Positions 5,112 through 7,905 of a DNA stretch of 64,000 nucleotides are shown piece after piece. The notes below the pieces were generated by a model. It ran no database searches, was not told the origin of the DNA, and was given only the letters and a program-made list of their open reading frames with translations. A program made the position numbers and the translations under genes. The first letter of the stretch is position 1. Each line of letters begins with the position of its first letter. The DNA lies in the IMG/VR virus record IMGVR_UViG_3300020438_000007, positions 62,001 to 126,000 of that record; one strand, given 5' to 3'.

Positions 5112-5368
5112 GCAGTTGCCAGTTTCAAATAAGAATCAATGAGTTCTCGGTGGGGTTCCACCAATGTTACTATTTTATCAGAACATATCATAATTTCAAC
5201 GTCGTCTGTTACCTTCTTTAACCAAGGCGACATATCATCACCCTCAAGTTCATAAGGTGATACAAGTTTGCAGTTTGGATCTCCAATATCAACAGCACCG
5301 ACTTCCTCTATCTTTGAGATAATAACGGCGCCATTAACTAGGATTAGTATCTTTACTTCCTGTTCCAT
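5108..5368 (-). CDS. Conserved hypothetical protein (possible Sm-like fold)
   Basis: KILILVNGAVIISKIEEV start; coupled to gp43 by ATGA overlap. Confidence 0.6.
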   Translation of the reverse strand: MEQEVKILILVNGAVIISKIEEVGAVDIGDPNCKLVSPYELEGDDMSPWLKKVTDDVEIMICSDKIVTLVEPHRELIDSYLKLATA

Positions 5369-5669
5369 AAATTTTAGTCTCGTAAGATTGTTTTACCATA
5401 GGTTTTGGTTCTACTATCGCAACGACCCAGCTGGGATCAATAGATATCTTTTTCTCATCAGATAAAGGCATCCAAGGATAGTATTGTACACTGTACTGTG
5501 TTTCTTCTTCCTCTTTTCCTTCTGTAAGTAACACAGGTGATTCAACCAACTTACAACAGTAAGCGTTTTCAAGAACGATGAAGATAGGTTTTTGATCCTC
5601 ATCTACAAGTTCTTTCACATCTGCGATGACTTCTTCGTTAGATTTTAGTAGAACTAGTTTGACGGTCAT
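5334..5669 (-). CDS. Conserved hypothetical protein (possible Sm-like fold)
   Basis: KLVLLKSNEEVIADVKEL...YPWMP...VVAIVEP. Confidence 0.65.
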   Translation of the reverse strand: MTVKLVLLKSNEEVIADVKELVDEDQKPIFIVLENAYCCKLVESPVLLTEGKEEEETQYSVQYYPWMPLSDEKKISIDPSWVVAIVEPKPMVKQSYETKIYGTGSKDTNPS

Positions 5670-5691: not shown

Positions 5692-5762
5692 AGCGGATGG
5701 GTGGTATTGCACCACCGTTTACAAGTTGGAAACCTGTCGTAATACTTTTATACGACACCCGC
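5692..5762 (-). tRNA. tRNA-Gly(UCC) with non-canonical D- and T-loops
   Basis: Folds as GCGGGTG/CATCCGC acceptor stem, GTA/TAC D-stem, ACAGG-TTTCCAA-CTTGT anticodon arm, GGTGG-TGCAATA-CCACC T-arm; U73 discriminator; no encoded CCA. Confidence 0.85.
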
Positions 5763-5764
5763 AT

Positions 5765-6000
5765 GAAAGACCATCTGCCCGACTCTCTTGAGTTGCATCT
5801 TAGGTCTTGAAAGAAAGAGGGGAGGTTGGGTTCCTGTGTACCAACAAAGAATGGGCATTACTACAGAGTAAATACATTCTTGCCTGAGACCCGACTGGTA
5901 AGTCGATTCTGCTTTCGCAGCAGCACCACCTGTGTCTCATCACCTTAACCAGCAGTATGCCAGTAAGTTTATTCAGTCACTCCCAATGTTGCGTCCAACA
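5765..6000 (-). ncRNA. Structured cyanophage ncRNA, manA/CfrI-like
   Basis: ORF-free; GGGAG(5984-5980)/CTCCC(5824-5820) closing stem; hairpins TGTTG-GACG-CAACA and GCTGC-GAAA-GCAG; own sigma70 promoter. Family name is from memory, not a search. Confidence 0.6.
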
Positions 6001-6005
6001 AACTT

Positions 6006-6034
6006 ATTATAGTACGGTCTGTGTGGAGTGTCAA
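6006..6034 (-). promoter_or_regulatory. Consensus sigma70 (early) promoter for ncRNA + tRNA
   Basis: TTGACA-17 nt-TATAAT on the minus strand. Confidence 0.85.
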
Positions 6035-7411: not shown

Positions 7412-7838
7412 GGTAGTTAATTCGAGCATGATGTTCTGGTACTATTTTACCTAGTTTAATTGTGAGAAGTCCATCTGCAAAATCTACATCCTTAACTGTA
7501 ATGTCTTCTGACAATGCCCAGGCTCTCTGGAAAGATCTCTGAGCCAAACCTCTGTGTAGGTACTCAGATTCTTCTTCTGTTTTCTCTTTCTTGCCCTCTA
7601 CAACAATCCTTCCATACTCTGTGTAGACATTAACTTCCTCTTTACTGAATCCAGCAAGTGCAATCTCTAGTCTAGAATCTACATTGTTTATCTGTACAAG
7701 ATTATATGGTGGGTAATTAGTAGTGGAATCAAAATTAAAGAACTGGTTGAAGTAGTCGTCCATACCGACGCTGTTCTTCATGATCTTGTCAACTAGTGTT
7801 CCCAGATCCTCAGTATGATATCTTTGAATGTTCGTCAT
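7407..7838 (-). CDS. hsp20: Small heat shock protein Hsp20
   Basis: NYPPYNL, LEIALAGF, HRGLAQRSFQR, DGLLTI alpha-crystallin motifs; AAGGAG RBS. Confidence 0.95.
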   Translation of the reverse strand: MTNIQRYHTEDLGTLVDKIMKNSVGMDDYFNQFFNFDSTTNYPPYNLVQINNVDSRLEIALAGFSKEEVNVYTEYGRIVVEGKKEKTEEESEYLHRGLAQRSFQRAWALSEDITVKDVDFADGLLTIKLGKIVPEHHARINYL

Positions 7839-7905
7839 GTTTCTCCTTTTAAAGCGAGTTTAGTTTTGTCCCTTACGGCGACATTACTAATTATACGATG
7901 AGCAT

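What the first reader, a model, noticed from the sequence alone, without database searches (positions are those of the whole stretch)
5692..5762. tRNA-Gly(UCC) with loss of both D-loop GG and the TTC T-loop, resembling non-proteinogenic tRNA-Gly
Stems, anticodon and U73 match a bacterial glyT-type tRNA. The D-loop reads AAAAGT (no G18G19) and the T-loop reads TGCAATA, so G53-U-G-C replaces GT-psi-C. The same paired change is the known hallmark of Staphylococcus tRNA-Gly species reserved for peptidoglycan cross-bridge synthesis rather than translation. Inference: this may be an EF-Tu-evading glycyl donor for a tRNA-dependent transferase, or a decoy for host anticodon nucleases.
Basis: partly seen in the sequence, partly recalled or inferred. 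Interest (0 to 1): 0.7.

Follow-up and report, generated by a model that had tools for sequence, protein, structure and literature searches.

The report
Phage glycine tRNA with alternative elbow
This is a real, conserved phage glycine tRNA whose corner ("elbow") uses an A18/G55 contact instead of the near-universal G18/Ψ55, a design found in hundreds of phage tRNAs of almost every amino-acid type and not found in the bacterial genomes searched; it most likely still works in protein synthesis and is not a Staphylococcus-like cell-wall tRNA.

Summary
A 71-nt tRNA-Gly(UCC) lies on the MINUS strand (5762->5692) with D-loop AAAAGUA and T-loop UGCAAUA. Only one tertiary contact is swapped, G18:U55 to A18:G55; G19 and C56, the exposed elbow pair, are kept.

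It is not decay. In 183 related phage tRNA-Gly genes, 142 are A18+G55, 41 are G18+U55 and none is mixed. Stems covary strongly and the GlyRS identity set is invariant.

The Staphylococcus-type reading is mostly not supported:
- The same elbow occurs in 290 distinct phage tRNAs of nearly all isotypes, including Bacillus phage SPO1 tRNA-Met.
- Their T-stems follow the isotype-specific EF-Tu tuning of bacterial tRNAs.
- The family uses anticodons UCC, ACC and GCC, and the wobble base tracks the carriers' glycine codon usage.
- Sister phages hold a canonical tRNA-Gly(UCC) at the same locus.
- The phage encodes no aminoacyl-tRNA transferase.

Best reading: a translating, GGA-reading phage tRNA built on a riboswitch/rRNA-type T-loop (UGNRA with an intercalating A). 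It is made from a consensus σ70 promoter behind a manA RNA leader. ARAGORN misses the whole class.

The parts
5692..5762 (-). tRNA-Gly(UCC), 71 nt, no encoded CCA. Acceptor 5762-5756 / 5699-5693; U73 = 5692.
   Evidence: RF00005 51.3 bits. Cloverleaf minimum free energy, z = -4.0. Identical copies in L048, L077 and L115. Stem covariation in 75 homologues.
5743..5749 (-). D-loop AAAAGUA (A14 A15 A16 A18 G19 U20 A21). A18 = 5746, G19 = 5745.
   Evidence: Read from the sequence. AG at positions 18-19 in 289 of 290 distinct alt-elbow tRNAs.
5728..5730 (-). Anticodon UCC, in the loop UUUCCAA (U33, A37 and A38 invariant in the family).
5705..5711 (-). T-loop UGCAAUA (U54 = 5711, G55 = 5710, C56 = 5709, A57, A58, U59, A60). 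Positions 54-58 read UGCAA, which fits the non-tRNA T-loop consensus UGNRA.
   Evidence: Consensus taken from bioRxiv 10.1101/2022.12.26.521914.
5763..5814 (-). 52-nt spacer between the manA RNA and the tRNA. It is absent in S-SSM7 and several relatives, where manA abuts tRNA G1.
   Evidence: Alignment with S-SSM7; upstream strings of relatives; Rfam coordinates in L012, L089 and L123.
5815..6000 (-). manA RNA motif (RF01745), the 5' leader of the transcription unit.
   Evidence: 186.7 bits, E 1.8e-50. Depth 100-1400 in RNA libraries against 0-25 in the flanks.
6006..6034 (-). σ70-type promoter TTGACA-17-TATAAT (12 of 12 matches), ending 5 nt before the first base of manA.
   Evidence: The same hexamers are present in S-SSM7.
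5334..5669 (-). 111-aa ORF of unknown function (phrog_431) starting 22 nt after the tRNA. No terminator lies between them, so it is probably co-transcribed. It is followed by an 86-aa ORF (phrog_483) and the gp43 DNA polymerase gene.
   Evidence: synteny with S-SSM7.

Best explanation
A functional phage-encoded elongator tRNA-Gly(UCC). Host RNA polymerase transcribes it from a consensus σ70 promoter as part of a manA-RNA / tRNA / small-ORF unit. RNase P and host 3'-end enzymes cut it out, the host adds CCA, and the host α2β2-type GlyRS charges it with glycine. It then reads GGA (and probably GGG) during translation of the AT-rich phage genome.

Its unusual feature is an alternative elbow. The inner D-loop/T-loop contact G18•Ψ55 is replaced by A18•G55, while the outer G19-C56 pair is kept. 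RNase P, ribosomal protein L5 and the L1 stalk stack on that outer pair. The T-loop thereby becomes the UGNRA type seen in riboswitches, RNase P RNA and rRNA, which takes an intercalating adenosine (here A18).

This architecture is a general, phage-borne alternative for tRNAs of almost all isotypes. It needs neither Ψ55 nor Gm18.

Shown: the sequence anatomy, the covariation, the distribution, the match between anticodon and codon usage, and the promoter. Inferred: processing, charging, decoding and the 3D geometry of the elbow. Why phages favour this elbow (freedom from host modification enzymes, or escape from elbow- or D-loop-reading nucleases) is open.
For: 1. Real, selected RNA. 91.0% of pair cells form standard pairs against 36-47% in slid controls. 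17 pairs change on both sides, and 0 of 500 shuffles reach the observed values.

2. Coupled tertiary change. 142 A18+G55, 41 G18+U55, 0 mixed. G19:C56 is G-C in 75 of 75.

3. Charging and decoding elements are invariant: G1 C2 G3 / C70 G71 C72, U73, U33, C35, C36, A37, A38.

4. Only glycine anticodons occur in the family: UCC 56, ACC 80, GCC 6. The wobble base tracks codon usage: ACC carriers use GGU 71% and GGA 11%; variant-UCC carriers use GGA 27%; canonical-UCC carriers use GGA 30% (p about 5e-15, no phylogenetic correction). Five loci carry variant UCC plus variant GCC.

5. Same locus, either allele. S-SSM7, L012 and L086 have a canonical tRNA-Gly(UCC) behind manA, and L086 has the same 52-nt spacer as the window.

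6. This genome is 39% GC and GGA is 34% of its glycine codons. Its other four tRNAs (Leu-UAA, Arg-UCU, Thr-UGU, Ile-UAU) also read A-ending codons.

7. The elbow is compatible with translation. There are 290 distinct alt-elbow tRNAs of nearly all isotypes, up to 19 in one locus, including SPO1 tRNA-Met. Their calculated EF-Tu ΔG follows bacterial class means: Ile -9.39 (class mean -9.4), Asn -9.56 (-9.4), Glu -10.02 (-10.4); Asp, His and Ala are tight, Val is weak.

8. Structural precedent. Non-tRNA T-loops are YGNRA with an almost exclusively adenosine intercalator (10.1101/2022.12.26.521914). The G19-C56 face is the recognition surface (PMC4810234). tRNAPyl lacks G18G19 and TΨC yet is used in translation (PMC1851642).

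9. Expression signals. There is a 12-of-12 σ70 promoter. RNA-library contigs cover the tRNA in at least nine RNA libraries, while the downstream ORF reads 0 in several of them.

10. Virus-restricted. One hit in 185,579 species' genomes, and that hit is a mis-binned pelagimyophage contig. Cellular tRNA-Gly genes in 41 marine alphaproteobacterial genomes are all canonical.
Against: - The T-stem is predicted to bind EF-Tu weakly: -9.5 kcal/mol for the window, and a mean of -9.1 for 27 distinct marine variant tRNA-Gly. Compare -10.1 for canonical phage tRNA-Gly, about -11.0 for marine alphaproteobacterial tRNA-Gly and -10.8 for the bacterial class mean (PMC3239215). By the published criterion this is an outlier like the Staphylococcus NP tRNA. 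U51-A63 is held in 25 of 27 while pairs 49-65 and 50-64 vary.
- L118 and L008 carry a canonical and a variant tRNA-Gly(UCC) in tandem, which hints at non-redundant roles.
- No read-level evidence was available for a mature CCA-ended or aminoacylated species. The runs are held only as assembled contigs, and some contigs run on into the flanks.
- The codon-usage test is not corrected for phylogeny.
- The A18/G55 geometry is inferred by analogy, not modelled.
Confidence: 0.72

Rival explanations
1. One reading: a non-proteinogenic, EF-Tu-evading glycyl donor for an aminoacyl-tRNA-dependent transferase, analogous to the Staphylococcus NP tRNA-Gly.
For: U55 and G18 are lost, as in the NP tRNAs (PMC13443448). 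The calculated EF-Tu ΔG of -9.5 equals the NP value and is 1.3-1.5 kcal/mol weaker than cellular tRNA-Gly. A weak 51-63 pair is conserved. Canonical and variant genes sit in tandem in L118 and L008. The gene lies apart from the genome's tRNA cluster.
Against: The elbow is not glycine-specific. G19-C56 is kept, whereas NP tRNAs have U19 (PMC4574755). The wobble base tracks codon usage and UCC+GCC pairs coexist. A canonical allele occupies the same locus in sister phages. The phage genome has no match to FemAB, Acetyltransf_6, LPG_synthase_C or Leu_Phe_trans, and the control genomes did give matches. The hosts (marine cyanobacteria, SAR11) are Gram-negative and are not known to build tRNA-dependent interpeptide bridges (general knowledge).
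Confidence: 0.07
2. Decoy or escape variant: the altered D-loop and T-loop exist mainly to resist or soak up a host tRNA-directed defence nuclease or modification enzyme. Translation may or may not continue.
For: The elbow is essentially confined to viruses. It has spread across phage families and isotypes. There is precedent: the PARIS nuclease AriB reads D-loop U16, and the T5 tRNA escapes through a D-loop substitution (PMC12409363). A18, G55 and variable N54 remove the substrates of TrmH, TruB and TrmA (inference from PMC7912444).
Against: Four of the five tRNAs in this genome keep the canonical elbow, so there is no genome-wide requirement. No nuclease that reads G18 or Ψ55 is known in these hosts. 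As a pure decoy it does not explain the match between anticodon and codon usage.
Confidence: 0.12
3. A processing handle only: a tRNA-like element that recruits RNase P or RNase Z to release the abundant manA RNA from the downstream mRNA, without being charged.
For: The manA 3' end abuts tRNA G1 in S-SSM7, L012, L089, L123 and others. The manA segment is far more abundant than its flanks in RNA libraries. No terminator lies between the tRNA and the next ORF.
Against: Most family members stand alone behind their own promoter, encode CCA and have no manA. The anticodon loop and the GlyRS identity set are invariant, which a mere handle would not need. The anticodon tracks codon usage.
Confidence: 0.06
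4. A decaying tRNA pseudogene.
For: ARAGORN does not call it. Its Infernal score is lower than that of its canonical homologue (51.3 against 62.2 bits).
Against: Perfect 18:55 coupling, 17 pairs with compensatory changes, an intact identity set, hundreds of conserved copies and a consensus promoter.
Confidence: 0.02

Closest known systems
Canonical tRNA-Gly(UCC) of Synechococcus phage S-SSM7 (annotated SSSM7_181) and T4-type phage tRNA-Gly
   Same: Same locus (hsp20 ... manA RNA, tRNA, two small ORFs, gp43), same anticodon loop UUUCCAA, same acceptor stem and U73, same conserved 3' flank.
   Different: S-SSM7 has D-loop AAUGGUA and T-loop UUCGAUU. All three non-acceptor stems differ by paired changes. 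Its 51-63 pair is C-G rather than U-A.
Staphylococcus non-proteinogenic tRNA-Gly(UCC) NP1-NP3
   Same: Glycine identity, loss of G18 and U55, weak calculated EF-Tu T-stem (-9.5).
   Different: The NP tRNAs also lose G19, have an extra 32-38 pair, belong to an organism with Fem transferases, and the trait is glycine-specific. Here G19-C56 is kept, the anticodon loop is the same as in canonical relatives, no transferase is present, and the elbow occurs in all isotypes.
Non-tRNA T-loops (FMN and cobalamin riboswitches, RNase P RNA, rRNA): consensus YGNRA with an intercalating adenosine; also the rRNA type GGAAG
   Same: Positions 54-58 here read UGCAA, which fits UGNRA and the optimum UGHAA. The partner base supplied by the D-loop is A18. 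Other family members read CGCRA or GGCAG (10.1101/2022.12.26.521914).
   Different: Those motifs sit in riboswitches and rRNA. Here the motif is built into a tRNA elbow that also keeps the tRNA-specific G19-C56 pair. The commonest phage type, A54...U58 (AGCGU), is not described in that consensus.
tRNAPyl
   Same: A translating tRNA that lacks G18G19 and TΨC. The Desulfitobacterium hafniense tRNAPyl has G55 (PMC1851642).
   Different: tRNAPyl has a 5-nt D-loop, a 6-bp anticodon stem, a 3-nt variable loop and no 19-56 pair. The phage tRNA is otherwise a standard 7/4/5/5 cloverleaf.
Bacillus phage SPO1 tRNA-Met (annotated in FJ230960 / NC_011421)
   Same: D-loop AAAAGUA with T-loop GGCGGUA, the same elbow class, in a cultured phage.
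   Different: Different isotype, host phylum and phage family.

Membership tests
tRNA (Rfam RF00005), bacterial-type tRNA-Gly | Cloverleaf of 7/4/5/5 base pairs scoring above the family threshold | tested here: met
   51.3 bits against a gathering score of 29. Minimum-free-energy cloverleaf. 91% of pair cells paired over 75 homologues.
tRNA (Rfam RF00005), bacterial-type tRNA-Gly | GlyRS identity set: G1-C72, C2-G71, G3-C70, U73, C35, C36 | tested here: met
   All are present and invariant in 75 distinct homologues. The identity set itself is taken from established knowledge.
tRNA (Rfam RF00005), bacterial-type tRNA-Gly | Conserved G18, G19 and T54-Ψ55-C56 | tested here: not met
   A18 and G55 replace G18 and U55. 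G19, U54 and C56 are present.
tRNA (Rfam RF00005), bacterial-type tRNA-Gly | Mature, CCA-ended, aminoacylated RNA in infected cells | not testable with these tools
   Only assembled contigs of the RNA libraries were available.
Staphylococcus-type non-proteinogenic tRNA-Gly | Lacks G18, G19 and U55 | tested here: inconclusive
   G18 and U55 are lost, but G19 (with its partner C56) is retained.
Staphylococcus-type non-proteinogenic tRNA-Gly | Weak EF-Tu T-stem (A49-U65, U50-A64, A51-U63; about -9.5 kcal/mol) | tested here: met
   G49-C65, G50-C64, U51-A63 calculates to -9.5 kcal/mol. This is a calculation only (table from PMC3239215).
Staphylococcus-type non-proteinogenic tRNA-Gly | Partner Fem-type aminoacyl-tRNA transferase in the same system | tested here: not met
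   No match to PF02388, PF13480, PF09924 or PF03588 in the 231-kb phage genome. Host genomes were not tested.
Staphylococcus-type non-proteinogenic tRNA-Gly | Trait restricted to glycine isoacceptors and decoupled from decoding | tested here: not met
   The same elbow occurs in nearly all isotypes, and the wobble base tracks codon usage.
Staphylococcus-type non-proteinogenic tRNA-Gly | [quoted passage not shown] | tested here: inconclusive
   U32 and A38 could pair, but canonical phage and cellular tRNA-Gly(GCC) genes have the same bases.
YGNRA-type T-loop with adenosine intercalator | Five-nucleotide loop Y-G-N-R-A closed by a base pair, with two bulged nucleotides following | tested here: met
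   U54 G55 C56 A57 A58, then U59 A60, closed by G53-C61 (consensus).
YGNRA-type T-loop with adenosine intercalator | An adenosine from the partner element stacks between loop positions 4 and 5 | not testable with these tools
   A18 is in the right place by sequence and covaries perfectly with G55. No 3D model was made.

The most novel reading that the evidence does not exclude
The A18•G55 elbow is a virus-specific tRNA architecture maintained by selection. It lets phage tRNAs of any isotype fold and translate without host Ψ55, m5U54 or Gm18 enzymes, and makes them poor substrates for host or rival-phage factors that read the canonical D-loop/T-loop corner. In the marine tRNA-Gly family it is combined with a deliberately weak EF-Tu T-stem, which would give that tRNA a distinct kinetic or regulatory role. 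The literature searched here does not describe it.
Probability: 0.3. Interest if true: 0.8.

Novelty: new variant of a known kind. Interest (0 to 1): 0.62.

Why it matters
G18, G19, Ψ55 and C56 are textbook near-universal tRNA nucleotides, and Ψ55 is called the most universally conserved tRNA modification.

Here a large, coherent class of phage tRNAs replaces G18•Ψ55 by A18•G55 with perfect coupling. These tRNAs keep every sign of being charged and used in decoding, and the class was not found in the cellular genomes searched.

If this is confirmed:
- It gives a natural test of what the inner elbow contact and its modifications are for.
- It supplies a ready-made tRNA scaffold that is independent of host modification enzymes.
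- It offers a sequence marker for viral tRNAs.
- It opens a new place to look for phage escape from tRNA-directed immunity.

There is also a practical point. ARAGORN missed 27 of 27 of these tRNA-Gly genes, Rfam's filtered scan missed many, and one is annotated as a protein in a cultured pelagiphage. Phage tRNA inventories and codon-compensation analyses are therefore biased.

Tried and rejected
- My first viral-contig pattern had two gaps miscounted by one base and found nothing. I corrected it.
- BLAST hits to Listeria phage A511-type tRNA-Gly are canonical (GG D-loop, UUCGAAU T-loop) and irrelevant.
- Searches of the phage genome for aminoacyl-tRNA transferases (FemAB, Acetyltransf_6, LPG_synthase_C, Leu_Phe_trans) were negative.
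- I sought read-level evidence for processed ends or added CCA in two run searches and two read layings. All the runs are stored as assembled contigs. They show presence in RNA libraries and a very abundant manA segment, but neither maturation nor its absence. Contig ends near the tRNA borders can reflect strain variation.
- Eight literature searches found no description of an A18/G55 phage tRNA elbow. That is not proof that none exists, because most subscription journals, including the older phage tRNA sequencing papers, are not in the library.
- I rejected a pseudogene reading on the covariation evidence.
- No 3D model of the elbow was attempted and tRNAscan-SE was not available.
- I did not run a protein-RNA complex prediction, because it gives no verdict for RNA.
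Full report
WHAT IS THERE

Infernal with Rfam finds one tRNA in the window, on the minus strand at 5762->5692 (RF00005, 51.3 bits, E 4.5e-08). ARAGORN finds none.

Read 5'->3', the RNA is a standard 7/4/5/5 cloverleaf with a 4-nt variable region. Its anticodon loop is UUUCCAA (anticodon UCC) and it has U73 and no encoded CCA. The D-loop is AAAAGUA and the T-loop is UGCAAUA. The thermodynamic minimum is the cloverleaf (-26.9 kcal/mol, z = -4.0).

One refinement matters. With a 7-nt D-loop the numbering is A14 A15 A16 A18 G19 U20 A21, so G19 is still present, and so are U54 and C56. What has changed is G18->A and U55->G, together with A57, U59 and A60.

CONTEXT

The window is bases 62,001-126,000 of a 230,739-bp viral record that is estimated 99% complete. 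It is a T4-like cyanomyovirus closest to Synechococcus phage S-SSM7.

On the minus strand the order is:
- hsp20, a 2OG-Fe(II) oxygenase and a protein of unknown function (phrog_591);
- a perfect σ70 promoter, TTGACA-17-TATAAT, at 6034->6006;
- a manA RNA motif at 6000->5815 (186.7 bits);
- a 52-nt spacer, then the tRNA;
- 22 nt later a 111-aa ORF (phrog_431), an 86-aa ORF (phrog_483) and the gp43 DNA polymerase gene.

No terminator follows the tRNA. The genome's other four tRNAs (Leu-UAA, Arg-UCU, Thr-UGU, Ile-UAU) are clustered about 160 kb away and have canonical GG D-loops and UUCRANU T-loops.

THE SISTER PHAGE

S-SSM7 has an annotated tRNA-Gly(UCC) at the same place, directly abutting manA. 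It has a canonical D-loop (AAUGGUA) and T-loop (UUCGAUU) and scores 62.2 bits. Relative to it, the window's D, anticodon and T stems differ by paired substitutions, while the acceptor stem, the anticodon loop and the 3' flank are conserved.

Contig L086 carries the S-SSM7-type canonical tRNA behind the same 52-nt spacer as the window. L012 has a canonical tRNA abutting manA. L018, L034, L072, L074 and L080 have the variant abutting manA. The two forms therefore behave as alleles of one locus.

A LARGE FAMILY, WITH A COUPLED CHANGE

Pattern scans of IMG/VR contigs recovered 183 tRNA-Gly genes in the same 71-nt frame from 175 loci.
- 142 combine an A18-G19 D-loop (AAAAGUA, AGAAGUA or AGAAGCA) with a G55 T-loop (GGCAGUA, AGCGUUA, UGCAAUA, UGCAUUA or UGCGUUA).
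- 41 combine a GG D-loop with UUCRANN.
- None is mixed.

In an ungapped alignment of 75 distinct sequences, the following are invariant: G1 C2 G3 G4, U8, G10, A14, G19, A21, U33, C35, C36, A37, A38, C56, the 3' acceptor strand CCGC, and U73.

The formal pair count gives 91.0% standard pairs, against 36-47% when partners are slid. Seventeen pairs change on both sides (335 cells), and no shuffle in 500 reaches the observed values. The T-stem is 98.9% paired, the anticodon stem 96.5% and the acceptor stem 100%. The 19:56 pair is G-C in 75 of 75. This excludes a pseudogene and shows that the 18:55 change is a coupled replacement of one tertiary contact.

The family occurs in two settings:
- cyanomyovirus contexts, behind manA and without encoded CCA;
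- pelagimyovirus-like contexts, standing alone behind a TTGACA-17-TATATT promoter with CCA encoded, next to hsp20, gp45 and gp44, sometimes with an alpha-type tmRNA.

In cultured Pelagibacter phage Mosig it is unannotated, and a "hypothetical protein" is called over it.

IS IT A STAPHYLOCOCCUS-LIKE NON-PROTEINOGENIC tRNA?

The Staphylococcus NP tRNAs lack G18, G19 and U55 and have an extra 32-38 pair. They carry A49-U65, U50-A64 and A51-U63, which lowers EF-Tu affinity. Their calculated value is -9.5 kcal/mol against a class mean of -10.8 (PMC13443448, PMC4574755, PMC7826273, PMC3239215).

I applied the same published ΔΔG table.
- The window's T-stem gives -9.5 kcal/mol.
- 27 distinct marine variant tRNA-Gly sequences give a mean of -9.12 (range -9.5 to -8.1).
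- 31 canonical phage tRNA-Gly sequences give -10.1.
- The 51-63 pair is U-A in 25 of 27 variants, and G-C or C-G in 27 of 31 canonical forms.
- Cellular tRNA-Gly genes from 41 marine alphaproteobacterial genomes are all canonical and calculate to about -11.0.

Everything else points the other way:

(i) The elbow is not specific to glycine. I scanned for the same D-loop and T-loop with a non-glycine anticodon. Parsing gave 277 cloverleaf tRNAs in 121 loci. They cover Ile, His, Gln, Glu, Pro, Val, Phe, Lys, Trp, Thr, Met, Cys, Asp, Ala, Asn, Arg and Leu, with up to 19 in one locus. One of them is the annotated tRNA-Met of Bacillus phage SPO1 (100% identity). Pooled with the glycine set, there are 290 distinct alt-elbow tRNAs, and 289 have AG at positions 18-19.

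(ii) These tRNAs look tuned for EF-Tu. Their calculated ΔG by isotype follows the bacterial class means: Ile -9.39 (class mean -9.4), Asn -9.56 (-9.4), Gln -9.51 (-9.1), Glu -10.02 (-10.4). Asp, His and Ala are tight and Val is weak.

(iii) The glycine family uses anticodons UCC, ACC and GCC, never a non-glycine one and never CCC. Loci with ACC use GGU for 71% and GGA for 11% of glycine codons. Loci with variant UCC use GGA for 27%, like loci with canonical UCC at 30% (Mann-Whitney p about 5e-15, not corrected for phylogeny). Five loci carry a variant UCC and a variant GCC tRNA together.

(iv) This phage is 39% GC, GGA is 34% of its glycine codons, and all five of its tRNAs read A-ending codons.

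(v) G19-C56 is retained. This is the flat face that RNase P, protein L5 and the L1 stalk stack on (PMC4810234).

(vi) The phage genome has no match to FemAB, Acetyltransf_6, LPG_synthase_C or Leu_Phe_trans, and the control genomes did give matches.

Two observations remain unexplained by a plain translation role: the weak T-stem, and the tandem canonical plus variant tRNA-Gly(UCC) in L118 and L008.

HOW THE ELBOW PROBABLY WORKS (INFERENCE)

Outside tRNA, T-loops in FMN and cobalamin riboswitches follow YGNRA (UGNRA 88.7%, CGNRA 10.9%, optimum UGHAA). They take an almost exclusively adenosine intercalator between loop positions 4 and 5. tRNA is the exception, with U at position 2. An rRNA type, GGAAG, is also known (bioRxiv 10.1101/2022.12.26.521914).

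The window's positions 54-58 read UGCAA, and the D-loop base that would intercalate between 57 and 58 is A18 instead of G18. Across the 290 alt-elbow tRNAs the 54:58 combinations are A:U 109, G:G 93, U:A 48, C:A 22 and U:U 10. The U:A and C:A classes fit YGNRA, and the G:G class (GGCAG) resembles the rRNA type. The commonest class, A54:U58, is not covered by that consensus.

So the phage elbow looks like a tRNA that has adopted the generic T-loop/receptor solution while keeping the tRNA-specific outer pair. tRNAPyl shows that a translating tRNA can do without G18G19 and TΨC (PMC1851642).

A consequence, again by inference, is that TruB (Ψ55), TrmH (Gm18) and often TrmA (m5U54) have no substrate in these tRNAs.

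DISTRIBUTION

A scan of one genome for each of 185,579 prokaryotic species for the variant tRNA-Gly found a single hit. It lies on a 10.8-kb contig of a marine alphaproteobacterial MAG. That contig carries a T4-type sliding clamp and clamp loader next to the tRNA, so it is mis-binned phage DNA.

A generic elbow pattern in 401 alphaproteobacterial genomes gave only that contig plus two matches that are not tRNAs. The reversed-pattern control gave seven matches. Within what was searched, the architecture is viral.

EXPRESSION

At least nine RNA libraries from several studies hold the tRNA segment. In several of them the tRNA is covered at depth 12-23 while the downstream ORF is at 0. The manA segment reaches depths of 100-1400.

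Some contigs join the tRNA to manA or to the 3' flank, as expected for a precursor. All the data are assembled contigs, summed over related phages, and DNA carry-over cannot be excluded. This is consistent with transcription but says nothing about maturation.

DETECTION

ARAGORN called 31 of 31 canonical and 0 of 27 variant tRNA-Gly genes. Rfam's filtered gathering-mode scan missed most GGCAGUA-type members.

VERDICT

The Staphylococcus analogy captures a real resemblance (loss of G18 and U55, weak calculated EF-Tu T-stem). It fails the tests for membership and for a non-translational role.

The best-supported reading is a translating, GGA-reading phage tRNA-Gly built on an alternative A18•G55 elbow (confidence about 0.7). 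The reason phages favour this elbow, and the meaning of the weak T-stem in the marine glycine family, remain open.

I found no description of this elbow class in the searchable literature, which is suggestive but not conclusive.

Noticed in passing
window 5815-6034 (minus strand); also L007:3101-3301, L012:1-169, L089:3075-3263, L123:2977-3167: The manA RNA motif starts 5 nt after a perfect σ70 promoter and serves as the 5' leader of a tRNA. In S-SSM7 and several contigs its 3' end abuts tRNA G1, so RNase P cleavage would define the manA 3' end. In RNA libraries the manA segment is 10-100 times deeper than its flanks. That fits a stable free RNA as well as, or better than, a cis-acting leader.
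   Followed up: partly
L128:1503-1576 (Pelagibacter phage Mosig EXVC030M, MT647606, record about 7781-7854): An alt-elbow tRNA-Gly with anticodon ACC and encoded CCA lies behind a TTGACA-17-TATATT promoter. It is not annotated, and a 31-codon 'hypothetical protein' (Mosig_000011) is called over it.
   Followed up: yes
L130-L212 (viral contigs): tRNA-Gly with anticodon ACC (A34) is common in pelagimyophage-like contigs (80 copies). From my own knowledge this anticodon is very unusual for bacterial-type tRNA-Gly. The carriers use GGU for 71% of their glycine codons.
   Followed up: partly
L347 / L348 (NHEU02000038.1, MAG Alphaproteobacteria bacterium TMED93): This 10.8-kb contig, binned into a bacterial MAG, carries a T4-type clamp loader (phrog_168) and sliding clamp (phrog_223) beside an alt-elbow tRNA-Gly(ACC). 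It is almost certainly a mis-binned pelagimyophage fragment.
   Followed up: yes
L118:7499-7651 and L008:850-1002: A canonical tRNA-Gly(UCC) and an alt-elbow tRNA-Gly(UCC) sit in tandem 11 nt apart, both with encoded CCA, in a pelagiphage-like contig. The reason for keeping both is unexplained.
   Followed up: no
L006:1239-1590 (own genome, about 194.2 kb); L042:13025-13456, L050:9545-9981, L118:8203-8608: ARAGORN calls a permuted tmRNA in this cyanophage genome. Pelagiphage-like contigs carry an alphaproteobacterial-type permuted tmRNA, in L042 and L050 immediately followed by a glutamine riboswitch aptamer.
   Followed up: no
L216 (IMGVR_UViG_3300021957_000076), L257 (Bacillus phage SPO1): L216 holds at least 10 alt-elbow tRNAs of different isotypes, and one other locus holds 19. 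SPO1's annotated tRNA-Met has the same elbow (AAAAGUA with GGCGGUA).
   Followed up: partly
own genome, G000:C1:229958-230029 (outside the window): A tRNA with anticodon UAU (Ile, reads AUA) is among the four clustered canonical tRNAs. All five phage tRNAs read A-ending codons.
   Followed up: partly
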